This document shows positions 431 through 47,500 of a DNA stretch of 64,000 nt, one piece after another. The translations under genes were made by a program, and so were the position numbers. The notes under the pieces were generated by a model. That model had not been told where the DNA came from. It was given only the letters and a program-made list of their open reading frames with translations, and made no database searches. Position 1 is the stretch's first letter; every line of letters starts with the position of its first letter. The stretch spans positions 157,218 through 221,217 of IMG/VR virus record IMGVR_UViG_3300035181_000471; one strand, given 5' to 3'.

Positions 431-3400
431 ATGGCACTTTTCGATCAGTACACAGAACCAGGAGTCTACACCCGTGAATCGGCGGACGCTCCTGGTGTCA
501 TCCTATTCGGTGACCTTCGTATTCCTATCTTCATCGGAGAGGGAGTCGAGGAATTCACCAATAAGAATGTGACCCTCCACAGAGGTTCTAGTTCTGTGGC
601 CGATGATCTAGTGGTCAAGGAAAACATCACTGACCAGCTTTACAACGAGAGCAACATCTACAGTCCCACTCGCTCCTTCCAGCTAACTTACTTTCCTGTT
701 GTTAAGGGTGATGGAACTGGAACCACCACTTCCCAGCCTACCGACATCACCGTCCTAGCTAACGGAGTTCCAGCCGCCGTAACCTCCCTAAACGGCGTTA
801 CTGGTGAGCTAATGCTCCACGACATCTACGGTGCTGATACCACCCTAGAAGTCACCTACTACTTCAAGCGCAAGGATACTTACTTCGCTAACGAGAATGT
901 GTCTTCTCAGGTTCCTACCTTCGCTACTTGGACACAGCAGGCCAACCTCGTCCTATCGCTAACTAACCCTGGCGCTCTAGGTAACAATGTCACCCTAGCT
1001 CTAACCAAGGTCACTCCCACCTCTGATGCACTAGCTGTGTCTGGTATCGGAACTGACTCCATCTCCATCGAGCTACAGCGCACCGCTAAGGCAATTGCTG
1101 TTGGCCTACCCCTAACCTTCAATGCCGCTGGTAAGACCATCACCAGAGCTACTGGAACTTGGCCTGCTGAGGGTGTTAAGATTGGTGACTCCATCACCCT
1201 ATCCGGTTTCGGAACTTCCGCCAACAACAAGGTTGTGACTGTATCTGGTGTGACTGACACCACCCTAACTGTGGCTGAGGTTCTAACCAACGCTACCACT
1301 GAAGTTGGAACTGTCTCCCTAATCGCAGTCAGATCCCTAACTGACCTAAAGAACCTAGTTCTTTCTGGAATCACCACCCTATCTGCTGGTGACCTAACCG
1401 TTGTTTCTCTAACTTCCGGTTTCGAAAATCTAGGTGCAACCGCCGCTTCCGCCTCCTTCTCCGGTGGTGCTGGACCCTCCTCTAACACCGTCTTTAAGGT
1501 AGCCCACACTCCTATCGTAGATGGTGCCAACGGTGGTGTTGTAACTTCCAACGCCTCTAAGGTTCAGGCTACTGTGAACGGGCTACCTGCTCCTATCGTA
1601 GCTGTTGATGGTCCTAACGGCCTAGTCACTCTAGCCTCCTCCGTGGTTGCTGGACAAACTGTGCTTCTAAGCTACTACTCCAACAACTATCAGGACACCT
1701 ACGAGCTTCTACCCTCTTCCAATGTCACCAGCATCTCTAATGTCGGTTACGGTCCTGACCGTGCTGATTTCGTAAACGGTGTTGATTATGTTCTAGAGAA
1801 CCTAGCTAACGGTTCCAGCCGCATCCAGTGGGGAGCTTCTGCCTCCGTTGCTACCGGAACTTGGACTGCTGGCTTCACTCCTTTCGATGCCTCTGTAGTC
1901 ACTACCACTCTAATTGACGAGAAGGTATACATGCAGCCTGTTCAGGGTGAGGTCAATGGCAAGAACGCCATCTTCACTCTAGCTGACAGCCCTGTTGATG
2001 GTTCTGGCCTCTCCAGAACTACTAACGATCCTGCTCTAGTTCAGATCTACATCGGCGCAAACCCTGTAGCCGCTCTAGCCGCTGGTGCTGTTCGCGTCAT
2101 TCAGGTCGTCGGGGCTAACCGCACTGTCAAGCTCTACAATCCTCCTGCATCTGGAACCGTCTACGCTTCCTACTACAGAAGCGCACTAAACGACCACAGC
2201 TACACCTTAACTGTCGGAACCCCCGGAATCACCGGACAGGGAACCTACAAGATCTCCAATGAGCTAGGTGCTGTTATCGCTCCAATCGTTGCTGGTGCTT
2301 CTGCTGTAAGCGAAGCCGCAAACTTCGCTTCTACCGGAATCGTATGGCCTATCAACAACGCCCTATCCGTTCCCGACCTCTCCACCACTCCTGGTGTAAG
2401 CCCTGATGAAACCATCACTCTCACCTTCCAGGATGACAGCCTTCAGTTCACCGTAACTCCTGCTGTCCAGGCCACTGCCAAGGACACCTCTGGAGCCGGA
2501 ACCAATGCCGCCATTCAGTTCCGCACCACTACCGCTTCTTCCGCTCCTAACGGTGTTGTGACTGTAGTGCTACAGGCTGGTGCTGGCGTTGCTGACGCAG
2601 TTGCCATCACTGGTGGTGGAACCAACGCCATCGTGGTCAACATCCTAAAGAATGGTGGAACTGTCTCCAGAACCCTACAGGAGATCATCAACCTATTCGC
2701 TACTTACCCCACCAGCACCCCCCTTGGTGGATTGATCATCTGCGAAGCCGCTCCTGGATCTGGCCTAAGCCTAACCGCTAACGCTGTTCCTACCTCTGGT
2801 GGCCCCATTGCCTTCACTGGCGGTGTGACTCTTGTTCAGACCCCCTACGCTATCCGCTACAAGGTGACTTCTTCCAGAACCACCACCAACCAGACCGCTG
2901 ATGGAATGGGCCTAACTGGTGGAGTACACACTCCTTCCTACCTCAACTACTCCGGTGGTGGAACTCCTGTAGGAGCCGATGGTTACCTAGATCAGACTTA
3001 CATTGATGCCGCAACTGGTGTCAAGTTCACCATCGTCAACCCAACTGACGCTCTAAGCTTCGGTTACACTTCCCTGCCCTCCCCTTCCTACCACTACCGT
3101 CCAGGTGACACCCTAACCTTCACCGTGAACAAGGCTACTGCTCGTTATACCTCTTCTGTCCCCACCGTCAGCATCCCTGGCCTAAAGGTCAAGGTAGCCT
3201 CTACCTACGGAATGAAGGCCGCTGACACCGCAGTCATCACCACCTACAACAAGGCTGGTAATGAGCCCTCAATCGGTGACTTCTACTATGCAAGCTATAC
3301 CGTGGCTAAGAGCGAGAGTGACATGGGTCTAAAGATCTACACTAACCCTGTAGACGCTTACGCTCAGTACGGTGATCCTAACCCAACCAACAAGCTATCC

Positions 3401-4321
3401 CTAGCTACCCGCCTCTTCACTCAGAATGGTGGACAGATCTTCGGATGCATCCAGGTTGCTAAGGAAGTTGGCCTAGAGACTGCCTCTGACCAGGCTTTCA
3501 TGACCGCAATCGCTTCTCTAGCAACTCCTCTACCCGGCACTGATCGTAAGGCCGATATGATTCAGCCTCTAACCACTTCTCCAGTGGTTGTACAGTATCT
3601 AAATCGTCACCTTCTAACCCAGTCCTCTCAGCGTAACTCTGGAGAAGCCACCGCAGTTTACGGCTTCGACTACTACGCAACCCCCGACACCATGAGAAAC
3701 TCTGCCCGTTCCATTAAGTCTGATCGTATGATCGCCGTTGGAACCCCCGGAGCCATCCTAGAAATTGATGTCGCTGGTAAGACCGCTGAGTTCGCTGTCG
3801 GTGGTGAGTTCCTCGCCGCTGGTATGGTCGGAATGATGATCAACCCCGCAATTGATGTTGCTACCACTCTAACCAGACAGAACCTAGTTGGTTTCAGCCG
3901 ACTCATCAAGAGATACGATGGTCCTACTATGGATCAGATGGCCTCTGACGGTGTTACCTGCATCCAGGAGAACAACGGCGCCTTCCAGGTTCGTCACTGG
4001 ATCACCACTGATAACTCCAGCCCCCTCAAGAGAGAGCCTACTTCTCGCTTGATCGTTGACTACACTCGCAAGATCGTTCGTAGAAACCTAGATCAGTTCA
4101 TTGGTCGTAAGCTAATGCAATCCACCATGAACTCTGTCTCCATCGTAGCCTCCTCTACTCTAAAGGCCCTAGTGGAACAGGAGATCATCGAAGGCTTCAA
4201 GAATCTCGTAATCGAGAGAGATCAGGCCGATCCTACTGTTCTTCATGTGAGGTTCTCCATGAAGCCCATCTTTGCTCTGCTCTACATTGATGTGGCTCTA
4301 ACGGTCTCCACCAAGCTATAA
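431..4321 (+). CDS. contractile tail sheath protein with large inserted domains
   Basis: N-terminal Y-x-x-PGVY-T-R-E and a sheath-type C-terminus (RLIVDYTRKIVRRNLDQFIG...DPTVLHVRFSMKPIFALLYIDV). Preceded by an AGGGAG RBS; 1296 aa. Confidence 0.92.
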   Translation: MALFDQYTEPGVYTRESADAPGVILFGDLRIPIFIGEGVEEFTNKNVTLHRGSSSVADDLVVKENITDQLYNESNIYSPTRSFQLTYFPVVKGDGTGTTTSQPTDITVLANGVPAAVTSLNGVTGELMLHDIYGADTTLEVTYYFKRKDTYFANENVSSQVPTFATWTQQANLVLSLTNPGALGNNVTLALTKVTPTSDALAVSGIGTDSISIELQRTAKAIAVGLPLTFNAAGKTITRATGTWPAEGVKIGDSITLSGFGTSANNKVVTVSGVTDTTLTVAEVLTNATTEVGTVSLIAVRSLTDLKNLVLSGITTLSAGDLTVVSLTSGFENLGATAASASFSGGAGPSSNTVFKVAHTPIVDGANGGVVTSNASKVQATVNGLPAPIVAVDGPNGLVTLASSVVAGQTVLLSYYSNNYQDTYELLPSSNVTSISNVGYGPDRADFVNGVDYVLENLANGSSRIQWGASASVATGTWTAGFTPFDASVVTTTLIDEKVYMQPVQGEVNGKNAIFTLADSPVDGSGLSRTTNDPALVQIYIGANPVAALAAGAVRVIQVVGANRTVKLYNPPASGTVYASYYRSALNDHSYTLTVGTPGITGQGTYKISNELGAVIAPIVAGASAVSEAANFASTGIVWPINNALSVPDLSTTPGVSPDETITLTFQDDSLQFTVTPAVQATAKDTSGAGTNAAIQFRTTTASSAPNGVVTVVLQAGAGVADAVAITGGGTNAIVVNILKNGGTVSRTLQEIINLFATYPTSTPLGGLIICEAAPGSGLSLTANAVPTSGGPIAFTGGVTLVQTPYAIRYKVTSSRTTTNQTADGMGLTGGVHTPSYLNYSGGGTPVGADGYLDQTYIDAATGVKFTIVNPTDALSFGYTSLPSPSYHYRPGDTLTFTVNKATARYTSSVPTVSIPGLKVKVASTYGMKAADTAVITTYNKAGNEPSIGDFYYASYTVAKSESDMGLKIYTNPVDAYAQYGDPNPTNKLSLATRLFTQNGGQIFGCIQVAKEVGLETASDQAFMTAIASLATPLPGTDRKADMIQPLTTSPVVVQYLNRHLLTQSSQRNSGEATAVYGFDYYATPDTMRNSARSIKSDRMIAVGTPGAILEIDVAGKTAEFAVGGEFLAAGMVGMMINPAIDVATTLTRQNLVGFSRLIKRYDGPTMDQMASDGVTCIQENNGAFQVRHWITTDNSSPLKREPTSRLIVDYTRKIVRRNLDQFIGRKLMQSTMNSVSIVASSTLKALVEQEIIEGFKNLVIERDQADPTVLHVRFSMKPIFALLYIDVALTVSTKL

Positions 4322-4328
4322 GGAATCA

Positions 4329-4362
4329 AAATCAGGGGGAGCTTAAAACCTCCCCCTGATTT
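4329..4362 (+). terminator. 13-bp hairpin after sheath gene (terminator or mRNA-stabilising stem)
   Basis: AAATCAGGGGGAG / CTCCCCCTGATTT inverted repeat with a short U tract. Confidence 0.65.
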
Positions 4363-4376
4363 CCTACCGAGGAACT

Positions 4377-23247: not shown

Positions 23248-23844
23248 ATGTACGAACTTAAACCAGGACATATCCTCTTAGCTGAGAAAACTAGAGGATG
23301 GAAACTCTCTAACTTCTTCCCATTTGCAATTCGACTTATCACTGGCAACAAAATCACTCATGTTGCCATAGTAGAGTCTTGTGATTTAAATTCTGTCTCC
23401 TACTGGGACGCCAACTCTGGTAAGGGAGTAAAATGTTCTCTAGTTCCCAACATGGAAAATTCAAAAGAAGGCGGTCTACTACTAGCCAACGATATGGTTG
23501 TAACTAAGGTCGCGGAGCTTCCACTTATTGATAGCATTCATGTTAGTGCTATTATAAATGAACTTCATTTGCTTGAAGGCTCTAAGTATAATTATGCCAG
23601 TATTCTTACATTAATGAAAGACCACATTCTAAGACAATTCTACACTCTACCTACCACAAAACCAGATTCAAGTTTTGGTAGAAAGTTCACTTGCTCTCAG
23701 CTTGTGACCCACCTTCTTTTGAAGGCCGGATTCCCTTTCTCCAGGCTATTTACGACCGTGACTTACCCAGCCCTAGTAGAGCCAGATAATTTCACAACCG
23801 CTCCATTCGTGGTTATTCCCCTCTCTGAATTAAAGAGGGGTTAG
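23248..23844 (+). CDS. permuted papain-like (YiiX/NlpC-P60) amidase/peptidase
   Basis: LKPGHILL...THVAIV...G.KYNY...FTCSQLV...VEPDN. His precedes Cys, the permuted NlpC/P60 order. Confidence 0.8.
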   Translation: MYELKPGHILLAEKTRGWKLSNFFPFAIRLITGNKITHVAIVESCDLNSVSYWDANSGKGVKCSLVPNMENSKEGGLLLANDMVVTKVAELPLIDSIHVSAIINELHLLEGSKYNYASILTLMKDHILRQFYTLPTTKPDSSFGRKFTCSQLVTHLLLKAGFPFSRLFTTVTYPALVEPDNFTTAPFVVIPLSELKRG

Positions 23845-26800
23845 CACGATTGAGTATAGCGAGGGTTCATTGGCGATGATAGCCCATGCCGTTCCAGCTA
23901 CATTCCCCCAATCAGAGACATAAGAAACTTGATCAGGAAGCAGGGAGTAGGCCCAACCATAATCTGGCATTCTATTGGGTAGGATTCCATTGTTAATCGT
24001 AACAATGGTGCTACTGTTTGATCCCAGCTTTCTGGCTAACAGTTCATATTGGAATGTGCCCTCTGACCAAGGATACGGGGATACTCCTGGGTATCCTCTG
24101 TCTGGTAGGTAGGGGACAAAGCCAGTTACAAGACCCACCGTCATTCTGAAGGCAAGAGCGTTAATGGATGCGGCTGTAGCTTTGGCAGTCTCTCCAGCGG
24201 CCAGTAAGAACATGGCTCCCCAAGTGTTTAAGTCCAGTGCATCAGCCGTATCTGGTGTTCCGTTGAACCCCTGGTAAAAACGCTCGGCATCTGCATTCCA
24301 AAGTTCTGCTACAATGGCTGTTTTCAGGCTGTTAGCTTCCGTGGTGTAAGAAGACACTCCTGTTACATGACCACAAGCCTGAAGAGCAAAATAGCAATCA
24401 ATGTTATGCTCGGTTGAGAACCAAGCAATAGGAGCGTTAGCGTAAACATCATTAGTGTAAACACCCCTGCCACCCTTAATCAATTGGTGGGGACCGACTG
24501 TAGCTTTGTCCTGTAGGAGTCTGTCTACACCCGCACGAGCAGCAGTAGTGGCCGCAGTTGCAAACTGTCCTTCAGGCATTAGATGAGCGTAAAGAAGGAG
24601 AGCGTAGCAACACCAAGCGTGAGCGCCAGTCCTATAGTAAGGATCAACACTTAACCCAGTAGTTGCATCAAAGCTGAAATACCACTCCTTAGAGGTTGAA
24701 TCTTGCGCTTTGATGAGCCATTCAGCGAGGAAGTCTGGTGTGTTAGGGTCTTGAACTTTGTAAGCCAATGATGCAATCAAGGCAACTGCCTGATCGTAAG
24801 CGTAGCATCGGTTACTCAGAGAGGCATACGCAGAATCGGTTGGAGGAATAATGTAGCTTCTAACCAAACCGCCATGATTTCTAGTGATCTCTGCGCGACT
24901 TCCAGGTGTTCCTGAAGCGGCTACGAGCTTTGCCGTGTAATCACCATCTAGGTAAGTCCAGGGTCTATTTCCGGTAGACCAAGTTTGATTGGTCAATGCT
25001 GGTACGGTGTCGATGTAGTATTCGATGTCCGTCTTTTTCCAAAGTTCAACTGCGTAATTTGGGTCGATAGATGCGGTGTAATCAGTGGTGGCAACCAAAG
25101 TATAAACAAAGTTACCCGTGCCAGTCCATTTGAGGGTTCCAGTGCCAGTGCTTTGAGCCAGAGTGACGGTAGCTCCGCTTAATGTGTAATCGGTCACTGA
25201 AGCCGTGCCACCAGTCGGAGTTGGTATAAAGCTAGTTCTAACTGTACCAAGCTCCACTTGAGGGTGACTAAATCTAATGGTTCCAGTTCCAGCCGCTACA
25301 GTGCCAATACCACAACGCAAGGTTGTAGCACCACTAGTTGCTCCAATTGTTAGTATTGTAGTAAGTATCCCAGTAGTTAAAGTTCCTGCTGCTGTTCCAG
25401 ATGGATTAGCTGGGCAAACAGGGTAAGTTATTGTGCCACTGGGGAGGGCACCACCAAGAACTTCCTGGGCAGTCAAACCACCAGAAACCGCCTCGACTAA
25501 CATGGAAAAACAGTAAGAAGTATTTGCATTCAGTGTGACTGTCTGGCTAAGGTAAGGTCTCTGCGCCGTAGCCGTTTGAGTGTAGGCTGTTCCAGGTCCA
25601 CCCAAAGTAGAGGCACCAGGAGTGGAAGTTCCAGTCGCAGTTGGTTGAGTCCATCCAGTTGGGGCCGCGCCTCCTCCCGTTAATAAAGAGTTCCAGAAGC
25701 TATTGGTTCTTGAAGTGGGGAGGAGCGGAATAGTCCCCTGCCAATCCGTGCGAGTTAGGGTACTGATTGTTGGAGATTGACTTGTTAACCCACCTAATGC
25801 CGTAAGGGTAAACGAAGTGCCGGAGCCACTAATAACTTCGTTTGTAAAGGATAGTGGCTGACTGGTTCCTTCTCCGAATTTCAGAAGCTTTGCAACTTTG
25901 TATCCAGCAGAGGCGTTAGCTATCGACCAATGCCCACTACCATCTAGCACGGAGTAGTAAGGTAGGGTAGGGTATTCCACATTAGCCACAATATCAAATG
26001 CAAGAACTCGGTAAAGTGGATAGTCGGTTACTACAACGCCTGAAACAGAACCAGCAATGGGGCCAGTGTAAGCGTCAGAGTAGCTACCTGAAAAAGATAC
26101 GGACCCTGTAAATGGAGCCGTGTAGTTAGGTGCGGTCCAATTACCTCTACCGGCAAAACTATTTGGAGTTGTGTGAGTGTAGGAAATGTCGTAACCTGGA
26201 GTTGCATTCAGAGCTTTTGTCTGGTTCAAGATCCACTTTCGTTCTTGGTAGAACCCGTTCCAGTTGATCAGGTCAGACAGGTCAGTTGAAGCGTAGTAGT
26301 TGCTGAAGTCTGCGTAAGCCTGATCCTGAACGAAGTCCAAGTGAAGAAAGACATTAGCTTCAATGTAAGAACCCTCTTCAGGTACAAACGATACGGTGAC
26401 TCTACCAGAACAGTATTGAATGGCCTTAGGCTCTAAGCGAGAGTGAGGGTAGATGGTAGTCGTGCCAAACTCATTAGCGTCCACAATGGCTTCATTCACA
26501 ATGATTCCAGTCAGGCTAGTGTCACCAGTCATATAACCAGCAACCGTTACAGTTAGATTATTACCAACGAAGCCAGAGAAGGTGATAGAGTCTCCGATCT
26601 TTACTCCGTCTTCCGGCCAAGATCCCAAGGAACGGATGATGGTTTTGGTGGAAGCATCAAAAGTTAAATTGCCAGTATCCAAGACTCTTGTTGGGGAGAA
26701 GTTGTCTAGCAGGGCATTCATGTCACCCTGGATGAACGACATCCATACAGTAAAGGGATTAGTTGACTGATCGAATATCGTCAAGCTAGTGGCTGAGGTT

Positions 26801-27078
26801 AGAATGACAGACTCTCTTGGGAACTCAATGGTGGCTCCGCGATTATCGCCTCTGCCCTCAGTGGCCCAGGAAGCCATCTGGAGGGGATCTAGAACCCCAT
26901 TAATATAGTGCTTTCCATCGAAGCTAAAACCAGTTAACCCTAGAGTTGGGTTGAAAAACGCATCGTTGTCTTCTACACGGATTACACAGGAAGCCGTGGC
27001 TCCGCTTCCAAACATCTGCTGTAGTCCCGTGGAGTCCAGGGACGAAGAAGAAATCAAGGGTGGAAAAGTGTTAACCAT
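23830..27078 (-). CDS. virion/fibre protein with C-terminal (alpha/alpha)6 glycosidase-like domain
   Basis: 1082 aa with a Thr/Gly-rich carbohydrate-binding-like centre (PQVELGTVRTSFIPT). C-terminus YAYDQAVA...TGAHAW...STEHNID...LWN...RFYQG...ALD.NTW...WSEGT. Has its own AGGAG RBS and late motif. Confidence 0.65.
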   Translation of the reverse strand: MVNTFPPLISSSSLDSTGLQQMFGSGATASCVIRVEDNDAFFNPTLGLTGFSFDGKHYINGVLDPLQMASWATEGRGDNRGATIEFPRESVILTSATSLTIFDQSTNPFTVWMSFIQGDMNALLDNFSPTRVLDTGNLTFDASTKTIIRSLGSWPEDGVKIGDSITFSGFVGNNLTVTVAGYMTGDTSLTGIIVNEAIVDANEFGTTTIYPHSRLEPKAIQYCSGRVTVSFVPEEGSYIEANVFLHLDFVQDQAYADFSNYYASTDLSDLINWNGFYQERKWILNQTKALNATPGYDISYTHTTPNSFAGRGNWTAPNYTAPFTGSVSFSGSYSDAYTGPIAGSVSGVVVTDYPLYRVLAFDIVANVEYPTLPYYSVLDGSGHWSIANASAGYKVAKLLKFGEGTSQPLSFTNEVISGSGTSFTLTALGGLTSQSPTISTLTRTDWQGTIPLLPTSRTNSFWNSLLTGGGAAPTGWTQPTATGTSTPGASTLGGPGTAYTQTATAQRPYLSQTVTLNANTSYCFSMLVEAVSGGLTAQEVLGGALPSGTITYPVCPANPSGTAAGTLTTGILTTILTIGATSGATTLRCGIGTVAAGTGTIRFSHPQVELGTVRTSFIPTPTGGTASVTDYTLSGATVTLAQSTGTGTLKWTGTGNFVYTLVATTDYTASIDPNYAVELWKKTDIEYYIDTVPALTNQTWSTGNRPWTYLDGDYTAKLVAASGTPGSRAEITRNHGGLVRSYIIPPTDSAYASLSNRCYAYDQAVALIASLAYKVQDPNTPDFLAEWLIKAQDSTSKEWYFSFDATTGLSVDPYYRTGAHAWCCYALLLYAHLMPEGQFATAATTAARAGVDRLLQDKATVGPHQLIKGGRGVYTNDVYANAPIAWFSTEHNIDCYFALQACGHVTGVSSYTTEANSLKTAIVAELWNADAERFYQGFNGTPDTADALDLNTWGAMFLLAAGETAKATAASINALAFRMTVGLVTGFVPYLPDRGYPGVSPYPWSEGTFQYELLARKLGSNSSTIVTINNGILPNRMPDYGWAYSLLPDQVSYVSDWGNVAGTAWAIIANEPSLYSIVLTPL

Positions 27079-37000: not shown

Positions 37001-37232
37001 CAACACCAGCACTTCGGACTATAGCATCAAGGACTTCACCAGCACCGATGTTCTATACGAAACCACTCCTGGAACTTGGGTAGCCACTCCAACTGGATTG
37101 CTATACTCCCACGCTTGGTCCTCTATCGTCCCAACCCCAGGCCGCTATGTAATCCCCATTGGCGTCACCATCACCGATGCCAAGGGAATCTCAGTCGCCG
37201 GAACCACTTCTGTTACCCTGATTGTTCCTTAA
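31047..37232 (+). CDS. giant Ig-like (putative Ig/He_PIG, PKD) repeat virion fibre protein
   Basis: 2061 aa with repeated GGxAPYxW...LPxGLxL...G.LSGTP units and a PKD-like STHVFTTPG. Confidence 0.75.
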   Translation: MALTLTPIILSEQNRVFPLTSESTGVTIRLATGSSGEIGTIKVEGFAPPIANLDWSIYQNPSWVTLEVDSSDPSLVHLRYTNATPNPQGLHQFFVSVNDGNSIIRYPIAIDVKKPFYLSVLSPRTDTIDLRAYDAGTAVTTIKAYGQSDREITSGDVCFLPPVLPDGLEFLTGLGNEAVIQVAQPSASDASGGVKVVTPYSQVIQVQAYQPGSMYDIPNDPVRTYTKNITLNVNTSLPGTFGSAVTCSYDDTNNYFVLKAVTSFALGEPKALTYAWSATGTGTGVMTGATTDTMHFAPNVASGAVTFHLDIKDANNGNVLLQHYDIGPMNVCNAGSDGATWEANNALKLWATAPVVSGAAGEPVSITIAGDPGVASVVVSFSVSGSGITAPGNITLLNGVPQTLILNVPGGATNKQKWTLTANGTSGSATGQARVVIESAGTPALLVSASNSSIVQDTGSLINPSIMTAAYPTLSTVIPGVDFYLVNAPAGLKLGQDGVITGGSLFNTVDDSAFSFKVMAVKPGYSPSYLNMTLDVTTSATPIEFSKFFSSVTNTTDNSPFTLSWRYPETTASLWLQKNVEAPVEVVSNASATVVGDSLFSLTGTNFYGTAYSTPLVVISDTAANLTKLPSAKTSAVIDMNNKMTIKWSPDPINNLYNLYKGWSITYKKNGGSVLALPNADTIITGLEDATGTLSTRVFSYQMGPDNIALSMKALSANRVAIGDSDAWSHLLDFPPVLTPTTFTLDKTTAKLGEPVTISMDSGYIGGSAWRVRYAEGKATEWLPTSLKTSTHVFTTPGPQTITIEIESDFSVEKPPVSLQRTMTLSLFVEDEQFLVSNANASVIGNIGIGGAEGFEVTDSSSGTYSREPYEVITRSIVKDEQTQEVKLLIATSRNNNASSALGTMALDVFPIQGRPHMKNLVLPALNLNGNTGLVSSVKIVSESLPDAVVGKPMPETQLQVSGGTAPYDWYSSNLPQGLVLNTDGTLSGTPMLMGVYTIDFSVKDSTSPAYIDSRTLVFSVKSDIAISEVSAPTAKVGTFYSHTIASLGGLAPFSWRLANGELPIGLSIEPSSGKILGLPCTYNSTTDFTKNFLFTPEVTDSIGAKASKQLYMSLAPADLTLGSMDQSIIYKDEDAKFAIPVYGGQSPYHLASFTSDGTIGSDLTLKTPEVINAVSELTPSLLVITTGDQIFNPQGTPVAGVYPTPYNVSFSVDVAGGVPGYRLSIDTSNPSLNTLPNADIIGNVVTGTVTADGHYTVNIKVVDSDGFGVSYSKVIRVTTNDNSTEAYSTTLEFVGVKKNGSNNTATWTFRKLSALPNILKDVPYKNLADTAEFYGLALWDNDLNQPAQALALPITAGKLSTSVQGGAEGQYAALGISAFTPSWTITTEGTGVFNVAGSLPIGYGTSGTASGPYAFFLFADSTAGAGIPVINQKISKVTDPTFGILSDYQIGTITLYSVTGDPLYSKSMFIYCSDSGDNTTSTPVVEVTSTRTQTIEGDIYDPLSATYNSSEARHFEYPLTAASGAAPYVFTVKDGSTLPGASIGVANGVPTLMVPSTSPIYTGTTSASYVAYVAATDKNGIVSQTATINVNYVPKTASTNPVQIVGVTYLQDIAVTDPTFRGYTGADLGVLDMMMWANQDVTWSLPPSEKADHESHGIVFITKPDNSFQIAGTPNVAQRYIFNVTATAVGAGSDTRVVYLDIVDPIVTIQGPTSPLTLNAKYNYATNHSVMKVSIEGYKVGTCPVVLVTNLGTLNPVPTNVNITSDMGMGHLGNPAYAQKWDAYYDFSTTVSGAGVLTTTGGVATTPYPFSAAATTLVAKGIVQPVVHVSEYATTFLPAPPLTITGGTAPYTYTVSSISNPTNFTISGGQLAMLMNSVSPTNQPGACDVTYTVTDSSTPTQTVVSTAGNVSVIVDAESYISAAFPTKEWVYTAGASTFPLYQVIQPKLGHKPYQWTITSVDFSAISGGMTGLVHKSSTNSILSINTSTSDYSIKDFTSTDVLYETTPGTWVATPTGLLYSHAWSSIVPTPGRYVIPIGVTITDAKGISVAGTTSVTLIVP

Positions 37233-37272
37233 TAAAATAATCAGGTTTCTGCTCCTATATTGAGGATCATAG

Positions 37273-40200
37273 ATGGCCGCTCAAACTATTAAACTTGTAA
37301 CCACCGGGGGCCAAGCCCCCTACACTTATTCTATCATTCATGATAACCTAACTACTCTCCCTTTGCCTTCCTATCCTCAGCCTGGAAATGCTAGTTACGC
37401 TACAGTTAGCTTCAATATGGGTAGCTCTGAAATCGTAGTTGACGCCACCAATGTCAACCCCGGAACCTACAAGCTCCACCTAAATATCACTGACTCCACA
37501 ACCCCTGTAGCCAAGATCACTACCAAAGTTATCACCATCAAGGTCTTGAACATTACCAAATTTGCCATCCTAAACGAATCTGAATCAGTCATTCCAGGTA
37601 GCTTCCCCTACCAAGGCTATGTCTTCCTAGAAGCCTCTGGAGCCACTGGAGCCGTGACTTGGAGCATTATTGATTCCATGACCACCCTCCCTGGAGCCGC
37701 AATCACCACTGACGGTTTCGGTAATTTAGTAGTGGCCTACTCAACTAGCCAGTATGGTGACTTCACTTTAGGACTCCAGGCTAAGGACAGTTTCAAGACC
37801 GTAACTCGCACCCTCACTATTAGTGTGATCGCTCCATCTGCCTACAAGTTAGTAGACGGTCAGGTCGAAGTAGTTTTTAGTGACGCAGGATACACCGAAG
37901 GAACTCACACCTTCAGTGTCAATGTAACTGACTCTCAATCCTCTCCCGCCTCCACCGCTCGCTCCTTCGAATACCTACTTCAGCCAGCTATCTCTACAAT
38001 CCATGTCCCCCAATCCTTCGTAAAATACTGGCACATGGACGATACCAATGAGGTCTATTTCCCCATCACTGGAACCTTATCAGGGCTTTCCATCAAGGAT
38101 TCTAGCGGAACCTTCTCCAATGGAGTGACCTATAGCGTAGAGGGTGCCGCCAGAAGAATCAAGTTCTCAGGGCCTCCAACTGTAGCCGAGAACTCCCAGC
38201 TTGTCATCCCAATTAACTTGCAGTTTAGTAACACTATCGTTGCCTCTGTGTCCAAAACTTTCACAGTGCCAGCTTTCGATGGTGCCTATGACGAGTCATC
38301 TATCTCCAGCAGTTGCTACACTAGACCTCTAGTGTCGGGTGAGTTCTTCTCTCTAAACCCCCAGAAACCTTACTACAACTCCCCCAGCATTGAGCGTCAC
38401 ACTTGGACCGCCAGAGTAGCGTCTGGGAACACCCTCCCTCAGGGCTTGAGCTTGGATGCCAACACCGGACTTATCTACGGAAAGCTTCTAGCTACGACTC
38501 CTCAGACTACATCTATCGAGTTCGTGGACCCCAACACAAAGCTCGTTAAGGGAATCATTGTCATTCACTTTGACATCGTAGCTTACGATTTCTCCTTGGT
38601 TGAAACCCTCTCGGCGGGTGCCGTGTCTTTCCCCTACACCGGATTGATCTCCACCACCTCTAATTCCGATCTGCTAGACGCCACTCTTTACTCTGGCACT
38701 CTCCCAAGTGGCCTAACCTTGGGCGTGTCAAGAACTCTAGCAACTGGTATTCTAACTTTCAACCACACACTATCCACTATCGCTAGAGCGGGTGGAAGTT
38801 GGGTTGATGATGCCGTTCACATTGGTAGCCAGCTTGTGTTCTCTGGCTTCACTACCACCGCAAACAACAAAACCTTCACCGTTACAGATGTCACTCCCTC
38901 CACTATTACCGTAGCTGAAAATGTTACCCTAGCTACTGAAACTGGTGTGGTTACTGCTAAGACTAAGGCTGTTATCTCTGGAACTCCAACTGAGTCCGGT
39001 CACTTCGACCTCTGGATTAAGGTGAGAAATGTGGATGGTAAAATCGGGCTCCTATACAAGAGGTTTGAAGTATCCTACTCCACTCCGCTCTCGGTTATCA
39101 CCACCTCACTCCCAACTCTAACCAATCAGCCTTATGCTGGAGTTCTAAGCGCAGTAGGTGGAACTGGCGTGTTCACTTGGAGCCTAAATTCCGGCTCCCC
39201 CGCACTCCCCGCTGGCATTACCCTATCCTCTTCAGGACTCCTAAGCGGAACTTACGCAGGGTCATCCTACAACCAGAACATCGTAGTGAAAGTTGTGGAC
39301 TCTAAGGGTGCATCGGCTACCGCCACTTTGAACTTCGCATTCAGCAACACTCTATCGGTCTCTACCGCAAGCATCCCCAAGATCATTCGTGGAGAGTACT
39401 ACTCTTTCACCTTGAAGGCATACGGCGGAACCGGAACCTACTCTAACTGGACTGTCACCGCTGGTGGGAGCTTACCATCAGGCATCACCTTAAACTCCGC
39501 TGGCGTCCTAAGCGGATTCGTAGCTACTGGAACTGCTTACACTCCAGCCAACTTGACTTTCACCGTTACCGACTCCTCTGCCGCCACCTCCAATAAGGTT
39601 CTAGCAGTAGGTGTGGCTGACGCCGCATCTGTTCTAGCTATTGACACTTCGGGAATCGGGGTGATCAGCAAGGGTAGCAACTATCAAGGTGTCATGAAGG
39701 TTTCCATCGGAGCCTCCACCGCTGTCGGCCCTTTCCACTGGGAAATCGCTCCTGGATCGCCTAACCAGCTTCCCACTGGCTTAGTTCTATCTGCCAACAC
39801 CACTGACTCCGGCATGACTGCCTTCATCTCTGGAAAGTGCATCTTAGCCCTAAGCAACTACTCGGTAAAAATCAGAGTAGTTGATGCAAATGGTCTATCT
39901 GCCACCACTTACATTCTTCTTTCCTCTGTTCCAAGTGTCACTATCTCCACCAAGGCACTATCTCAGGGTAAGGTAACTGAGGCATACACTCAGACCATTC
40001 TAGGTGACAGCGCCAATCTACCGATCACCTTCAGCCTAGACACCCCTCCTACCCTTCCAGCAGGTATGTCATTCAACTCCTCTGGAGTCCTATCTGGGAC
40101 ACCCTCTGGTGTGTATAACAACACCATCAATGTGAGACTCACCGATGCTCTCAATGACTATGTTGTTAAGCCTCTCCTCCTAGTTGTGAAGAACTCTAAT

Positions 40201-40923
40201 CTAGTCCTAACCACCACAAGCATCCCCACCATTTCAAGCGGCAAAGATTGGTCATACACTCTAACCGCCACTGGTAGCGCCGGAGGCTTTAAGTGGAGTA
40301 TCTCTCCTGATTCTACCGTTGGGTTACCTTCCAATGTGCAGTTGAATGAAACAACTGGTGTACTTTCCACTACTGGAACGAACTCTCTAGGAGTTCGTTC
40401 CATTATCTTCAGAGTCACAGACGCAGACGGAACTCACACCGACAAGGCCCTCTCTATGACTGTGGTTGCCAGCCAAGCCATCACCGCTGGACCTGACTAC
40501 ATCAACGGAACCACTCATGGCTATCTCGGTTATGTGAGACAGGACATCGCTTCCTTAACTTCTCAGATTCTACCTAGAAGCTCTAAGTCCTTCTACGCAA
40601 TTCTAACCAATTTTGCATCCACTTCCTTGACCCAGATTTCAGTATCAACTTCAGACCCAGCAGTCACCGCTGTAGCCGAAGCCATGACTGCTTCCGAGGT
40701 TCTAATTAACATCACTCAAGTCCCTGCCAGCACTCTAGGGGACAACACCTTCACCCTCACAATTGTTGATAATGCCACACCAATATCAGCAGTTTTGAAG
40801 TATAAAGTAATTGAAGGAAGAGATGTTAAGGTAACTCTACTAGATGGGTCTACACTTCCTGTCCAGTCCTTCACAGCCGAAGGTTGGATTGGAAGACCCC
40901 AGCCCTCACCAACCACCGCATAA
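37273..40923 (+). CDS. putative-Ig (He_PIG) repeat virion fibre protein
   Basis: 1216 aa with many LPxG[LI][TS]L...G.LSG repeats. Confidence 0.78.
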   Translation: MAAQTIKLVTTGGQAPYTYSIIHDNLTTLPLPSYPQPGNASYATVSFNMGSSEIVVDATNVNPGTYKLHLNITDSTTPVAKITTKVITIKVLNITKFAILNESESVIPGSFPYQGYVFLEASGATGAVTWSIIDSMTTLPGAAITTDGFGNLVVAYSTSQYGDFTLGLQAKDSFKTVTRTLTISVIAPSAYKLVDGQVEVVFSDAGYTEGTHTFSVNVTDSQSSPASTARSFEYLLQPAISTIHVPQSFVKYWHMDDTNEVYFPITGTLSGLSIKDSSGTFSNGVTYSVEGAARRIKFSGPPTVAENSQLVIPINLQFSNTIVASVSKTFTVPAFDGAYDESSISSSCYTRPLVSGEFFSLNPQKPYYNSPSIERHTWTARVASGNTLPQGLSLDANTGLIYGKLLATTPQTTSIEFVDPNTKLVKGIIVIHFDIVAYDFSLVETLSAGAVSFPYTGLISTTSNSDLLDATLYSGTLPSGLTLGVSRTLATGILTFNHTLSTIARAGGSWVDDAVHIGSQLVFSGFTTTANNKTFTVTDVTPSTITVAENVTLATETGVVTAKTKAVISGTPTESGHFDLWIKVRNVDGKIGLLYKRFEVSYSTPLSVITTSLPTLTNQPYAGVLSAVGGTGVFTWSLNSGSPALPAGITLSSSGLLSGTYAGSSYNQNIVVKVVDSKGASATATLNFAFSNTLSVSTASIPKIIRGEYYSFTLKAYGGTGTYSNWTVTAGGSLPSGITLNSAGVLSGFVATGTAYTPANLTFTVTDSSAATSNKVLAVGVADAASVLAIDTSGIGVISKGSNYQGVMKVSIGASTAVGPFHWEIAPGSPNQLPTGLVLSANTTDSGMTAFISGKCILALSNYSVKIRVVDANGLSATTYILLSSVPSVTISTKALSQGKVTEAYTQTILGDSANLPITFSLDTPPTLPAGMSFNSSGVLSGTPSGVYNNTINVRLTDALNDYVVKPLLLVVKNSNLVLTTTSIPTISSGKDWSYTLTATGSAGGFKWSISPDSTVGLPSNVQLNETTGVLSTTGTNSLGVRSIIFRVTDADGTHTDKALSMTVVASQAITAGPDYINGTTHGYLGYVRQDIASLTSQILPRSSKSFYAILTNFASTSLTQISVSTSDPAVTAVAEAMTASEVLINITQVPASTLGDNTFTLTIVDNATPISAVLKYKVIEGRDVKVTLLDGSTLPVQSFTAEGWIGRPQPSPTTA

Positions 40924-43755: not shown

Positions 43756-44507
43756 TGAGCTATGATTTTGATGTAAGAAATAAAGCCTGTGACCACCTCC
43801 AAACAAAGGAGCGCCAAACTTTATCTGATGATCTAAGAACCTTAGTTAACATCAATCACCCCGAGTGGGGTATTCGTGGTGCTGTAGCTTCGTCCTCTAC
43901 CGTTAAACTTTATATGAATGGTGTGGAGATACCATCCGGCCATGCTCAGTATGCTTGGAGTTTAGTCCCAGATTTGGATGCCTTGGGGGACAAACGCTAT
44001 AAAATCATGTTTGCCAATCAATTACGCTTTACTCAAGCCATTTTTGAAGTCAGCTACTTTACTGCGCCAGCTTACTGCTTGAAGTGCAACGGCTATACCC
44101 AGACTAATGACTTTACCATTAGTTCTCAGGGTTCGTTTGTCCATGTAACCGACCACAACAAGCTCATTCAAAGAGTGATGAAGTTCCTTCTATCCTCGTC
44201 TTGCCCCTTCTATCCTCGGTTCACATCTCGGCTAAAGGAATTTATTGGAAGGAAATTTGGCTTATCTCTTACAGAGGAGGACATTTCTTACGAATGTATC
44301 ACGGCTCTGGAGAACATGAGAAACATTCAAGTTACCCAAAAGAATGTGCAACTCCTGTCCCCAGAGGAAATTCTAAGGAATGTAGAGTCGGTAGATTCCA
44401 AAAGAGATTCAGTAGACCCCACCATCGTAAAAACACAAATTCGCGTTTCCTCCTACGGGCCTGATAGAGTAAATCCTCTAAACTTCGCCATCAGAACAAA
44501 AAATTAA
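43755..44507 (+). CDS. baseplate wedge protein, gp25-like C-terminal domain
   Basis: VTDHNKLIQRVMKFLLS...PFYPRFTSRLKEFIG...EEILRNVESV...DPT; located upstream of the baseplate J-like gene. Confidence 0.72.
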   Translation: MSYDFDVRNKACDHLQTKERQTLSDDLRTLVNINHPEWGIRGAVASSSTVKLYMNGVEIPSGHAQYAWSLVPDLDALGDKRYKIMFANQLRFTQAIFEVSYFTAPAYCLKCNGYTQTNDFTISSQGSFVHVTDHNKLIQRVMKFLLSSSCPFYPRFTSRLKEFIGRKFGLSLTEEDISYECITALENMRNIQVTQKNVQLLSPEEILRNVESVDSKRDSVDPTIVKTQIRVSSYGPDRVNPLNFAIRTKN

Positions 44508-44516
44508 GGATACTCC

Positions 44517-47500
44517 ATGTCAGTTGTTCCAGTAGCCCTACTCTCTAAGTTAACCCTGATCAAGCCAGCCCTCAATGGGACTCTAGTGTCCGTGGACTCA
44601 GGAGTTCTACCTATTGTTGTCGATGCTGATATCAAAACGATTCAGGTGTCGGTTGCTATCGAAGGTGTTGTAACTACGGCGTCTACTTGGGAAACTGTGG
44701 GCGGTAAGCGTAGATTCACGCTATCTCCAGTAATTCTACCAACCATCTCCCCCATCAAGATCACCTTGACTGGGAGAGATTTCGATGTTGCTAATCCTCC
44801 CGCTGTCGGACCCTGGAAAGTAACTCCAACTCTTGCCTTTGAATACATCTACTCTCAGTCCACTACACTACCCTCCATCACGCCTCCAAGCGGAGTCAAG
44901 ATTTACAGAGGTGCATCTAGCTGTAAGGTGGAGTGGGTTAAGCCTGATGAACTTACAGGGTTTCTAGGGGTTCGTGTGCAGGTTAGCACCGACCCCACAG
45001 GTGTCAATGTTCCCTATGTTCAGCTTGGTGGTTTGATTTCTGGAGTATCTAGAAGCACAAATAGTGTGATCTCCTCCAATTCAACAACCGCAACCGACTC
45101 CGTTGACACTTCCAAGGTGACAATCACAACTGTTCAGTCCACTATTCCAATCAATTTCTCCCAGGTTGTTGTCGATAAACTAGCTGTAGGTAACGCAGAT
45201 AAATTCTATGTAGTCCTATCCTCAGTTGTCCAAGATCCTGAGTCTAACCACATCTACGAGTCGAACTTCAACGGACCATTTACCTGTGGTTTCGTGGATT
45301 TAAGACAGGTATCCCCAACCGATTTCCTGACTGTCCAGCAGAAAGAAGAAATCGCTCTACGCTTAATCACAGCTACTACCCAGAATTACCCTGACCTAGA
45401 TCTAACTCCTCGCTCCGAGTTACGAGATGTTTTAATTGACCCCATCTCCCTAGAGCTTTCAGAGCAATCGGTTCGTGAGTGGTTTGGTAGGGTCTCTACT
45501 TCAATCTCGGCTCTAGCTACCCTCGATGACTACGATGGTGATGGCTTCTCTGATCCTCTTGCCTCCAATCCCTACAAGCCAATCATTGCTAGAGCTTGGA
45601 ACATGAATGAGGCGGATACTCAGACTTTGATTGACAAGCAGTTTGATATTATTGGCGAAAGAGCCGGATTGTATCGTGGCGGAGCAACCTCCGCTATCGT
45701 AACTATGACCCTCTACACCTACTCTAAGCCTTCTTCTAGAGTTTCTATTGACGCTTCAACTACTCAAGTAAGCTCTATCGCTGATTCGGATACCGCTGCC
45801 TTGACCTTCTATTGCCGTGGTTCTGTGGTTATTGACCCAGGCTCCGCTGACTCACTCTATGACCCTGTTAAGGGATGGTGGGCTGTTCAGCTTCCATTCG
45901 AATGCGCCATCACTGGTAGCGTTGGAAATGTCGGAGTTGGGACCATTCGCCAGCCTATTTCTGGCACTCCTTCTGGATGGCTTTGCACCAATCAGACTCC
46001 TGCTGATTTCGGTAGCGATGGAGAACTCAACGCTAGATACGCTGAAAGGATCAAGGACAGGCTTGTGGTCGGAATCGACTCAGGTAGACGCCTTGGTTAT
46101 TTGAACACGGCTAGGGCCATCCCAGGTGTTATTAGCGCCAATGTAGTGGCCTCCGGTGATCTAGAAATGCTCCGCGACTGGGATGATCTCAGAAAGAAGC
46201 ACACCTACGGGACCGTTGATGTGTATGTCAGAGGAACCTCCTCTTCACAGCAGACTGAAATCGTGCCGTTCTCTTACGAGACTAAAGCCACTCCTGGTGA
46301 TGTTTCAACTTACCAGATTTCCGACTACATCTCTCGTGTGTTTGATACCTCCAACATTGGTAAGAAAGAACCCAGACTCCAGTTCAAGGTCAGAGACTTT
46401 GATAAGTGGGGCTACCCAATGGTGGCAATCATTGACATGATCGCTTCAGGTAACAGTGGTGTGGTTCATCTCGGAACCCAGAGGGTTAAGATTGATGCCT
46501 CCAATGGTCTAATTAGCCTTGACCCAAACGAAGCGGTGTACAAGATCAAGAATGCTGGAACTACGGGTGAATACAAAGAAGATTACACCATCAACGGTGT
46601 CGTTATCAACAATCAAGCTTTCATCGCCTCCCTAGCATCCTCTGTCGTTGAATACAGAGTGGCTCCAAGACTCGCTTCTCCTCTTGCCTATGTCCCCTCT
46701 AACCAGCCTGTAACCAGTGTGTCTACGGTAACTGGTAGTGCAGATAGAACTGGCGTAATCCCCGCCTCTAATCTTCGTTTGATCAAGAGAGATGACCCAC
46801 TTCTTGAGGGTTTCTCTAGCAGATCCACAGACCAAATTCGCGTGGATTCCTACACTTTGGTAAGCCCACCCTTGGTCAAGACCATTCAGTTCACTGGGAA
46901 AGAACTACCAACTGGAAGTTTGAAATTCACTTCTAAGAAGATCACCAGAACCAGTGGGTCTTGGACCACCGATGGTGTACAGATTAACGACACAATCTTC
47001 ATTTCAGGTGTTGCTAGCAATAACGGCGCATTCACTGTAACCACTGTAACCCCAACCGCCATCACTACCCTTGAGGCTTTAGTTGCTGACGGTCCCGGCG
47101 CTCCCGATCAAGCTGGTAAGGTTCTGCTTGTCCCTGTAGTGCCTATTGACACTGGTATGGTGCTAAACTCTACTGGAAACATTTGGTCTGTAAGAAGTGC
47201 CGATTCCTCCATCGTCTACTCTTACGGAACCGCATCTACTGGTAACGACTACACAATTGTCCCATTGGATCGCTATGGCAATTACGGCATTCGTCTTCTA
47301 AGCACTTCTAGAACTCCCGAGAAGATTCTAGCTGGCCTATCTTTAAATCTGGATACCGATATCCTAGTATCTTACGATAAATATAGCCTAACTGAGTTCT
47401 GTGGAATGGTAGAGGAGACTCTTCTAATCTCAGGTTCAACCCCAACTCAGTTATCTCACAACGGATTCATCAAGAACATATGGGTTCCTGAAAGCTACGG

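What the first reader, a model, noticed from the sequence alone, without database searches (positions are those of the whole stretch)
1112..47130. One ~70-aa beta module inserted into four unrelated virion proteins
Seen: the module L[TK]F.....I.R..G[ST]W..[DE][GA]V.I.....[FLI]SG....NN...TV..V....[IL].V.E occurs in the sheath (~1112-1320), the minus-strand glycosidase-like protein (~26452-26670), the Ig fibre (~38752-38955) and baseplate J (~46911-47130). Two copies are clearly insertions. In the Ig fibre it splits a He_PIG unit between LPSGLTL and ISGTPT. In the sheath it sits between ISIEL and RSLTDL, whereas the paralogous internal repeat (IVVNILKNGGTVSRTLQEI) lacks it. The sheath and minus-strand copies share GVKIGDSIT[LF]SGF while their synonymous sites differ, which suggests selection on the protein. 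Inference: a mobile surface-display or docking domain spread over the tail, possibly related to the small beta-barrels annotated as E1-FCCH-like in phage proteins. It could provide multivalent glycan binding or fibre stowage.
Basis: partly seen in the sequence, partly recalled or inferred. Interest (0 to 1): 0.72.

Follow-up and report, generated by a model that had tools for sequence, protein, structure and literature searches.

The report
One small domain, four tail proteins
A ~70-residue beta-barrel domain has been copied into surface loops of four different tail proteins of a soil jumbo phage; it is a real, evolutionarily maintained add-on of a kind already known in phages (accessory decoration domains), probably helping the tail adhere to the host surface.

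Summary
Exactly four homologous ~70-aa modules occur in the 221-kb genome, in the tail sheath, a minus-strand tail-fibre protein, a He_PIG (Ig-repeat) protein and the baseplate-J wedge protein. Leave-one-out HMM E-values are 1e-12 to 1e-19. All four are indels: homologues in Tunturiibacter phage Tunturi_5 and in metagenomic relatives align on both flanks and lack the segment. The module folds alone into an all-beta barrel (AF2 pLDDT 97.7). It superposes on the E1 FCCH barrel (Z 8.4, rmsd 1.8 A) and on accessory barrels of phage tail tubes, tailspikes and endosialidases, but matches no Pfam, NCBIfam or PHROG model at threshold. It belongs to a large unmodelled family (1,109 representative clusters) that also forms tandem arrays in bacterial RTX/T1SS-type giant proteins. 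Phylogeny suggests the sheath copy is oldest and seeded the other three within the genome. Synonymous sites are scrambled, so the copies are old and maintained at the protein level. The best reading is a promiscuous, exterior accessory domain giving multivalent adhesion to host surface polymers; the ligand is inferred, not shown. It is a new member of a known kind, of moderate interest.

The parts
431..4321 (+). Tail sheath gene (1296 aa), host protein 1
   Evidence: PF17482 and phrog_2839 on the C-terminal core, aa 965-1294. 43% identical over full length to Tunturi_5 gp326 'tail sheath'.
1112..1318 (+). Module copy 1 (sheath aa 228-296). The whole indel relative to module-less orthologues is about aa 216-299 (nt 1076-1327).
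   Evidence: Leave-one-out HMM E 1.2e-19. Absent from Tunturi_5 and from 100 of 120 orthologues at this site.
2453..2932 (+). Paralogous sheath domain (aa ~675-834) that lacks the insert
   Evidence: hhalign of aa 131-380 (module removed) against aa 600-900: probability 98.2%, E 2.9e-14, aligned across the junction.
23830..27078 (-). Minus-strand tail-fibre-like gene (1082 aa), host protein 2
   Evidence: phrog_13714/7032 'tail fiber protein' on aa 671-1081. P0070 is a 75-80% identical orthologue.
26449..26676 (-). Module copy 2 (fibre aa 135-210)
   Evidence: Leave-one-out HMM E 2.2e-14. Homologues of the N-terminal domain in Tunturi_5, G001 and L119 align on both flanks and lack it; P0070 keeps it.
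37273..40923 (+). He_PIG (Ig-repeat) tail protein gene (1216-aa ORF; called as 1168 aa in the database), host protein 3
   Evidence: PF05345 He_PIG, E 6.8e-27, 4 stretches. 34-37% identical to Tunturi_5 gp245.
38746..38955 (+). Module copy 3 (aa 492-561), inserted in the loop of a He_PIG unit between LPSGLTL and ISGTPT
   Evidence: Leave-one-out HMM E 8.1e-16. Split unit read directly. Absent in Tunturi_5 gp245. Present in 9 of 120 homologues, all the closest ones.
44517..48563 (+). Baseplate J / wedge gene (1348 aa), host protein 4
   Evidence: PF04865 Baseplate_J on aa 380-572. 40-42% identical to Tunturi_5 gp241 'baseplate wedge subunit'.
46914..47129 (+). Module copy 4 (aa ~800-871)
   Evidence: Leave-one-out HMM E 3.5e-12. 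Absent in Tunturi_5 gp241. Present at the same site in the 5 closest of 13 orthologues.

Best explanation
The module is an autonomous, ~70-residue Greek-key beta-barrel of the FCCH-like fold. It acts as a promiscuous accessory (decoration) domain of the virion. Because it folds alone, it can be spliced into a surface turn of a host domain without disturbing that domain. In the ancestor of this jumbo-phage lineage it entered one of two duplicated outer domains of the sheath. It was later copied within the genome into the baseplate wedge protein, a He_PIG Ig unit and, probably from the He_PIG copy, the N-terminal domain of a side fibre. It is therefore displayed at very high copy number along the tail exterior and at the baseplate periphery. 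Its most likely job is weak, multivalent binding of host envelope or exopolysaccharide polymers, which would hold and orient the virion before irreversible attachment. Shown here: homology, autonomy of the fold, insertion at all four sites, dispensability for the scaffolds, intragenomic relatedness of the copies, and protein-level conservation. Inferred: exterior location and the ligand. I put about 0.85 on 'accessory inserted decoration domain spread within the genome' and about 0.45 on 'adhesion to surface glycans'.
For: Homology and copy number. Autonomous fold: AF2 pLDDT 97.7, pTM 0.86 with a 54-sequence alignment. Insertion at all four sites. Orthologue surveys: 18 of 120 sheaths, 5 of 13 wedge proteins and 9 of 120 He_PIG proteins carry it, always at the same site and always among the closest relatives. 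Sheath carriers lie in one 26-leaf clade (support 1.0) with non-carriers nested inside. A 100%-complete 314-kb relative has only the sheath copy. The baseplate J, He_PIG, fibre and close-sheath copies form an exclusive clade (aLRT 80), with the fibre copy nested in He_PIG (aLRT 82/94). DNA identity is 47-59% with scrambled synonymous sites. The core motif is retained while the module diverges as fast as or faster than its scaffold (44 vs 67%, 55 vs 67%, 57.5 vs 59%), as expected for an exposed domain. [quoted passage not shown] The K1F and phi92 endosialidase barrels match too (prob 0.92-0.99), and the K1F barrel holds a polysialic-acid site (PMC12632334). The same fold occurs in tail fibre, tailspike, wedge, tube, connector, nozzle and terminator clusters. 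The sequence family also forms tandem arrays in secreted bacterial giants, including one beside an OEP/TolC gene and one with RTX repeats.
Against: No direct evidence places the barrels on the outside of this tail or shows any ligand. Structural matches are at Z 6-8.4, a range the tool warns can reflect only a common arrangement. The conserved motif (R..GSW..DG[FV]..GD...SG...NNG) may be purely fold-determining. Faster evolution than the sheath scaffold also fits relaxed constraint. Repeated absence within the carrier clade shows the phage can do without it. No Pfam, NCBIfam or PHROG model gives a functional label.
Confidence: 0.6

Rival explanations
1. Structural brace. The barrel makes lateral contacts that stabilise the extended sheath lattice and the baseplate periphery, and has no external ligand.
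For: It sits in structural proteins that form lattices. FCCH-type domains on tail tubes shape the ring exterior (PMC13576161). The module is retained across sheath orthologues of 52-100% identity.
Against: 100 of 120 sheath orthologues, and lineages nested among carriers, assemble without it. It evolves faster than the scaffold, which is unlike a lattice contact. A brace would not explain the same module in a fibre, an Ig unit and bacterial RTX-type secreted giants.
Confidence: 0.2
2. Homotypic docking or fibre stowage. Modules on the fibres bind modules on the sheath or baseplate to hold the fibres retracted.
For: The same module occurs on the sheath and on fibre-like proteins of one virion. 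Retracted-fibre states are known in T4-type phages (general knowledge).
Against: A complete 314-kb relative has the module only in the sheath, so no partner module exists there. The sheath copy predates the others. The complex prediction gave no support, though it is formally 'no answer'.
Confidence: 0.07
3. Near-neutral passenger. The module is a well-folding domain that loops tolerate and that spread by illegitimate recombination, without benefit to the phage.
For: Gain/loss pattern and dispensability. Faster divergence than the sheath scaffold. The sheath site also accepts an unrelated insert in P0226.
Against: Reading frame, fold determinants and motif are kept at four sites after synonymous sites have saturated. 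Orthologous copies remain detectable at E 1e-8 to 1e-24 down to 52% scaffold identity. In the He_PIG protein the module is as conserved as the scaffold.
Confidence: 0.12
4. Chance or compositional similarity of Thr/Gly/Val-rich beta segments, with no real shared module.
For: The host proteins are rich in T/G/V/S beta sequence.
Against: Leave-one-out E-values of 1e-12 to 1e-19, with all other ORFs above about 0.02. 1,109 database clusters match the profile. A high-confidence common fold is predicted.
Confidence: 0.01

Closest known systems
Exterior 'E1 FCCH' domain of siphovirus tail-tube proteins (PF08813 class; T1, FCWL1, NBD2 gp39, MED16 gp13; also the Acinetobacter phage Mystique tube, 9n71)
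   Same: The same small closed antiparallel Greek-key barrel: Z 6.3-7.4, rmsd 2.0-2.6 A over 66-69 residues. The Mystique tube also matches by profile at E 0.007. It is an add-on to a tail structural protein, it is optional within its family, and it faces outward (PMC13576161).
   Different: In those phages it is a terminal or single fusion on non-contractile tube proteins. Here it is an internal loop insertion in a contractile sheath, a wedge protein, an Ig unit and a fibre, four times in one genome. Sequence similarity is marginal, and the hosts are not PF08813 proteins.
Ig-like accessory domains of phage structural proteins (Fraser et al. 2006, J Mol Biol 359:496; reference confirmed, content from my own knowledge)
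   Same: One small beta domain family spread promiscuously over unrelated virion proteins. It is dispensable for assembly and is proposed to bind cell-surface carbohydrates weakly.
   Different: A different fold (FCCH-like barrel, not an Ig sandwich). Here the mode is mid-domain loop insertion rather than a terminal addition or frameshift extension. One copy is actually inserted inside an Ig-like (He_PIG) unit.
Beta-barrel domain inserted in the catalytic domain of endosialidase tailspikes (K1F endoNF 1v0e, phi92 4hiz)
   Same: A barrel of the same size and topology inserted into another domain of a tail protein. Foldseek prob 0.92-0.99 at 20-25% identity; VIA Z 6.7-7.3 on residues 429-505 and 261-337. 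The K1F barrel carries a polysialic-acid binding site that includes S460, S468 and G504 (PMC12632334).
   Different: No significant sequence homology, and conservation of the ligand residues was not examined. The host proteins here have no sialidase propeller.
FCCH domain of eukaryotic ubiquitin-activating enzymes (Pfam PF16190)
   Same: The best overall structural superposition: UBA6 Z 8.4, rmsd 1.8 A, 67 of 72 residues. FCCH is likewise an insertion domain within another domain (general knowledge; Lee and Schindelin 2008, as cited in PMC13576161).
   Different: ~10% identity. The Pfam model gives no hit even at E 10. There is no E1 context, so the function is unrelated.
Pfam DUF5666 (PF18914)
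   Same: A small barrel, with TM 0.79 to an AFDB DUF5666 protein. Sub-threshold hits appear in two family members.
   Different: It does not match any of the four window copies, and its function is also unknown.

Membership tests
Pfam E1_FCCH (PF16190) | Sequence match to the family HMM at the gathering score (29.5 bits) | tested here: not met
   No hit for any of the four modules at E <= 10. No hit in the whole genome at E <= 10.
Pfam E1_FCCH (PF16190) | Six-stranded closed antiparallel Greek-key beta-barrel superposable on FCCH | tested here: met
   VIA-align: UBA6 217-290 Z 8.4, rmsd 1.8 A, 67/72 aligned; UBA1 Z 7.4-7.8. The model has pLDDT 97.7. Z is at the edge of the range the tool calls possibly generic.
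Pfam E1_FCCH (PF16190) | Occurs within a ubiquitin-like E1 adenylation enzyme | tested here: not met
   The host proteins are a sheath, a tail fibre, a He_PIG protein and Baseplate_J, with no ThiF/E1 domains.
Exterior FCCH-type domain of phage tail-tube proteins (PF08813 class) | Fold match to the tube accessory domain | tested here: met
   T1 tube 20-94 Z 6.3; FCWL1 21-94 Z 7.4; Mystique tube 109-176 Z 6.8. Atlas Phage_tube_2 cluster TM 0.89.
Exterior FCCH-type domain of phage tail-tube proteins (PF08813 class) | Detectable sequence homology to the tube domain | tested here: inconclusive
   Family profile against PDB: Mystique tube residues 126-174, E 0.007 (domain i-E 0.025). phrog_584 'major tail protein' matches family member P0126 at 4e-6 but a window copy only at 0.0055.
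Exterior FCCH-type domain of phage tail-tube proteins (PF08813 class) | Host protein is a tail-tube protein and the domain faces outward | tested here: not met
   The hosts here are not tube proteins. Orientation is not testable with these tools.
Promiscuous accessory (decoration) domains of phage virions | Small, autonomously folding domain | tested here: met
   AF2 pLDDT 97.7, pTM 0.86 for the isolated 72 aa.
Promiscuous accessory (decoration) domains of phage virions | The same domain family on unrelated classes of structural proteins | tested here: met
   Four classes in this genome. Also DUF2460, 'head protein' phrog_1236, 'major tail protein' phrog_584 and a pectate-lyase-like protein. 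Many virion classes by fold.
Promiscuous accessory (decoration) domains of phage virions | Dispensable: orthologous scaffolds exist without it | tested here: met
Promiscuous accessory (decoration) domains of phage virions | Exposed on the virion surface | not testable with these tools
   Inferred from analogues (PMC13576161), and from the insert lying in the middle ~900 aa of the sheath, outside the conserved C-terminal core at aa 965-1294.
Promiscuous accessory (decoration) domains of phage virions | Binds host surface carbohydrate weakly | not tested
   Analogy only: the K1F barrel polySia site (PMC12632334).
Pfam DUF5666 (PF18914) | Sequence match at the gathering score (27 bits) | tested here: not met
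   No hit on the four copies. Family members P0019 and P0132 reach only 20 bits.

The most novel reading that the evidence does not exclude
The sheath copy, displayed on every sheath subunit, turns the whole contractile tail of this Acidobacteriota-type jumbo-phage lineage into a multivalent exopolysaccharide-binding surface. The same cassette was then recruited to the wedge and fibres so that one ligand specificity is shared by the entire tail. That would be a host-adhesion role for a contractile sheath, with coordinated, cassette-based retargeting, which to my knowledge has not been described.
Probability: 0.2. Interest if true: 0.7.

Novelty: new member of a known kind. Interest (0 to 1): 0.45.

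Why it matters
It defines a large beta-barrel domain family with no curated model (over 1,100 clusters at 50% identity). The family is shared by phage virion proteins and by secreted bacterial giant proteins, and it deserves its own family model. The case is unusually clean for domain-in-domain insertion. The same module sits in four tail proteins of one genome, natural with-and-without orthologues exist at every site, and an order of events can be reconstructed. Those natural deletion variants give ready-made designs for testing what accessory domains on contractile sheaths do. The answer bears on how soil jumbo phages adsorb to EPS-rich hosts such as Acidobacteriota.

Tried and rejected
1. 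blastn of the sheath gene against the phage collection gave no match; tblastn was needed.
2. The search for related loci with the single sheath protein returned only an identical fragment; an alignment query worked.
3. Pfam, NCBIfam and PHROGs on the isolated modules gave no family at threshold. The sub-threshold DUF6905, Big_6 and GH70 hits were treated as noise.
4. The first AF2 model, built from only 4 sequences, was mediocre (pLDDT 77) and its Foldseek hits were weak. It was superseded by the 54-sequence model.
5. IQ-TREE with ultrafast bootstrap on 180+ modules timed out. It was replaced by a 83-sequence fast ML run with aLRT. Supports are moderate (76-94), and deep nodes of a 73-column alignment are unresolved.
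6. Complex prediction of the sheath module with the He_PIG module returned 'no answer'. It is not used as evidence either way.
7. PHROG annotation of ten neighbouring large ORFs gave essentially nothing.
8. The literature search for the Mystique tail-tube paper found nothing in the library.
9. phmmer of the whole sheath against PDB sequences gave no hit, so the insertion could not be mapped on a solved sheath.
10. The module profile found nothing in Tunturi_5 or in LR745208. That tool's pre-filter makes a whole-genome negative weak, but site-by-site alignments confirm absence at all four sites in Tunturi_5.
11. I considered whether the nested module-less sheaths reflect precise deletions. Their turn resembles the ancestral (N/D)G turn, so allelic replacement by recombination or repeated gain cannot be excluded. 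I therefore claim gain/loss dynamics, not a specific mechanism.


Full report
**Setting.** The window is the last 64 kb of a single 221,217-bp viral contig, which CheckV rates about 77% complete. Its closest cultured relative is the 309-kb jumbo myovirus Tunturiibacter phage Tunturi_5 from Arctic tundra soil. The sheaths are 43% identical over their full length (PMC11924767). The region encodes a tail module: a 1296-aa sheath (PF17482, phrog_2839), a Baseplate_J wedge protein, a He_PIG Ig-repeat protein and, on the minus strand, a protein whose C-terminal 400 aa match tail-fibre PHROGs.

**Check of the observation.** The four segments translate exactly as described and align with 19 invariant columns. 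An HMM trained on all four would be circular, so I used leave-one-out models. Each omitted copy is recovered at E = 1e-19, 2e-14, 8e-16 and 4e-12. No other six-frame ORF of the genome scores below about 0.02. A broader 54-sequence family HMM again finds exactly these four. The similarity is therefore homology, not composition.

**All four copies are insertions.**
- *Sheath.* Tunturi_5 gp326 aligns collinearly and lacks about 84 residues, exactly between ISIEL and VR(S/T)L.
- *Wedge and He_PIG proteins.* Tunturi_5 gp241 and gp245 lack the module at the predicted positions, inside alignments of 42% and 37% identity.
- *Fibre.* Homologues of its N-terminal domain in Tunturi_5, in a complete 314-kb IMG/VR relative (G001) and in contig L119 align on both flanks and lack the segment. 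A 75-80% identical orthologue (P0070) keeps it.
- *He_PIG split.* Other units in the same protein have about 6 residues between LPxGxxL and SGTP. This unit has about 85.
- *Sheath paralogue.* The sheath contains two paralogous domains (hhalign probability 98.2%, E 2.9e-14). The alignment runs straight across the junction, so only one paralogue carries the insert.

**Population view.**
- *Sheath.* Among 120 metagenomic sheath orthologues, 18 carry the module at the same site and 100 have a 4-5 residue turn there. Two carry a 108-aa divergent version of the module, and one carries an unrelated Gly-rich 85-aa insert. The site is therefore an insertion hot-spot.
- *Sheath tree.* On a scaffold tree built without the insert columns, 17 carriers fall in one 26-leaf clade (support 1.0). 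That clade also holds three module-less sub-lineages, and one carrier lies outside it.
- *Other sites.* The 5 closest of 13 wedge orthologues (50-67% identity) and the 9 closest of 120 He_PIG homologues (54-100% identity) carry the module at the same positions. More distant ones do not.
- *Deeper relative.* The complete relative G001 has a carrier sheath (52% identity) but only that single copy in 314 kb.

So the sheath copy is the oldest, and the other three sites were filled later in this sub-lineage.

**Origin of the extra copies.** I built trees from 299 and then 83 module instances drawn from the whole family. The wedge, He_PIG and fibre copies, together with the sheath copies of the nine closest relatives, form an exclusive clade (aLRT 80). 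The fibre copies nest inside the He_PIG copies (aLRT 82 and 94). This is the pattern expected from copying within the genome, from sheath to wedge and He_PIG and then from He_PIG to fibre. It is not the pattern expected from four separate acquisitions. Support is moderate, because the alignment has only 73 columns. The events are old: the copies share 47-59% nucleotide identity, the longest exact matches are 8-12 nt, and third codon positions are scrambled even inside the shared GVKIGDSIT stretch. No DNA-level trace of the insertion mechanism can be expected.

**What the module is.** With 54 homologues as the alignment, AlphaFold2 gives a compact all-beta domain (pLDDT 97.7, pTM 0.86).
- *Best superposition.* The FCCH barrel of UBA6/UBA1: Z 7.4-8.4, rmsd 1.8-2.0 A, 66-68 of 72 residues.
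- *Phage structures.* The same fold occurs as a discrete accessory barrel in phi92 endosialidase (residues 261-337), K1F endosialidase (429-505), LKA1 gp49, K1 lyase, the phi92 colanidase, the T1, FCWL1 and Mystique tail tubes, and the JBD30 baseplate.
- *Predicted structures.* It recurs in proteins labelled tail fibre, tailspike, wedge/gp6-like, tube, connector, nozzle and terminator.
- *Literature.* The FCCH domain on siphovirus tubes is described as facing the exterior (PMC13576161). The K1F barrel carries one of three polysialic-acid sites (PMC12632334).
- *Sequence level.* No Pfam, NCBIfam or PHROG model reaches threshold on the window copies. The Pfam E1_FCCH and DUF5666 models do not match them at all. 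The only solved protein with marginal profile similarity is the Mystique tube (E 0.007).

**The wider family.** The four-copy profile finds 1,109 representative clusters at E <= 1e-3 among 1.84 billion proteins. Of these, 201 score at E <= 1e-10, and many are giant proteins with up to 15 tandem copies. Members include a DUF2460 distal-tail protein, proteins matching 'head protein' phrog_1236 and 'major tail protein' phrog_584, and a pectate-lyase-like protein. There are also clearly cellular proteins. One has 12 copies and sits on a 5.9-Mb chromosome between housekeeping genes, next to an OEP/TolC gene and a DUF4347 giant. Another has RTX repeats. The family consensus is TGtLTF..a.dTITRssGSWitDGF.vGd.ItvsGta.NNGtyTItaVTatvLTl. 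It is an extracellular display module used by both phages and bacteria.

**Selection.** Across orthologues the module diverges faster than the sheath scaffold (mean identity 44% vs 67%). It diverges somewhat faster than the wedge scaffold (55% vs 67%) and at the same rate as the He_PIG scaffold (57.5% vs 59%). The reading frame and the motif are kept throughout. This fits an exposed accessory domain with a conserved core and a variable surface. It argues against a rigid lattice contact and against a decaying passenger, but it cannot separate adaptive surface change from relaxed constraint.

**Mechanism.** The best-supported reading is a promiscuous exterior decoration domain. It is tolerated in surface turns because it folds on its own, and it was multiplied within the genome. 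It would be displayed at high valency along the sheath and at the baseplate and fibres. Adhesion to host surface polymers is the most likely function, by analogy with the endosialidase barrel, with Ig-like accessory domains and with the family's use in secreted adhesin-like giants. This step is inferred. The docking (fibre stowage) idea is weakened by the relative that has only a sheath copy. It gained nothing from the complex prediction, which returned 'no answer'.

**Verdict.** The E1-FCCH-like guess holds at the fold level only. The functional proposals remain untested. FCCH-like barrels as optional add-ons of phage tail proteins, and promiscuous accessory domains in general, are already known. 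This is a new sequence family and an unusually clear four-site, single-genome example that includes a contractile sheath, so I class it as a new member of a known kind, of moderate interest.

Noticed in passing
window 431-4321 (sheath aa 131-380 vs 600-900): The giant sheath contains an internal duplication of an outer domain (hhalign probability 98.2%, E 2.9e-14). Only the first copy carries the module.
   Followed up: yes
sheath orthologues P0226, P0170/P0171, P0243/P0245/P0264: The same sheath turn is an insertion hot-spot. P0226 has an unrelated 85-aa Gly-rich repeat insert there, and P0170/P0171 have a 108-aa divergent module. Some longer sheath orthologues (1421-1569 aa) carry PF11999 (precomputed Pfam) elsewhere, so different lineages decorate the sheath with different add-ons.
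   Followed up: partly
window 23830-27078 (-): The only minus-strand gene in the tail block looks like a fusion. Its N-terminal ~260-aa domain is a separate 185-189-aa ORF in Tunturi_5 and L119 and sits at the C-terminus of a 374-aa ORF in G001. The 75-80% identical orthologue P0070 lacks window residues ~406-660, a second large indel.
   Followed up: partly
L004 / Tunturi_5 gp245, gp246; window 31047-40923: Tunturi_5 annotates the He_PIG protein's orthologue and its neighbour as 'regulator of chromosome condensation'. The window orthologue is a He_PIG Ig-repeat tail protein, so that label looks like an annotation artefact. He_PIG homologues at ~30-40% identity are abundant in Acidobacteriota (Tunturibacter, Bryobacter) giant surface proteins, which fits an acidobacterial host.
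   Followed up: no
G000:C1:129851-129943 (outside the window; L114): A weak sub-threshold DUF5666 match (E 0.015, 13.9 bits) lies in a 962-aa ORF elsewhere in the genome. It may be another small-barrel domain unrelated to the four copies.
   Followed up: no
whole record G000: CheckV rates the record ~77% complete, and the identical sheath and He_PIG proteins are also on record on a 286,616-bp contig. The true genome is probably ~290 kb.
   Followed up: no
G003, G005, G006, G007 (IMG/VR relatives): Other jumbo-phage relatives show several weak partial matches (profile positions ~27-70, E 1e-6 to 1e-2) to the module profile in different large ORFs (447-2545 aa). Multi-protein use of related barrels may be common in this phage group.
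   Followed up: no
window 13941-16253: A 770-aa ORF has only a weak SbcC-like (coiled-coil type) PHROG hit (E 5e-4). Most other large ORFs in the tail block (1009, 1276, 735, 691, 931 aa) have no PHROG match at all.
   Followed up: no
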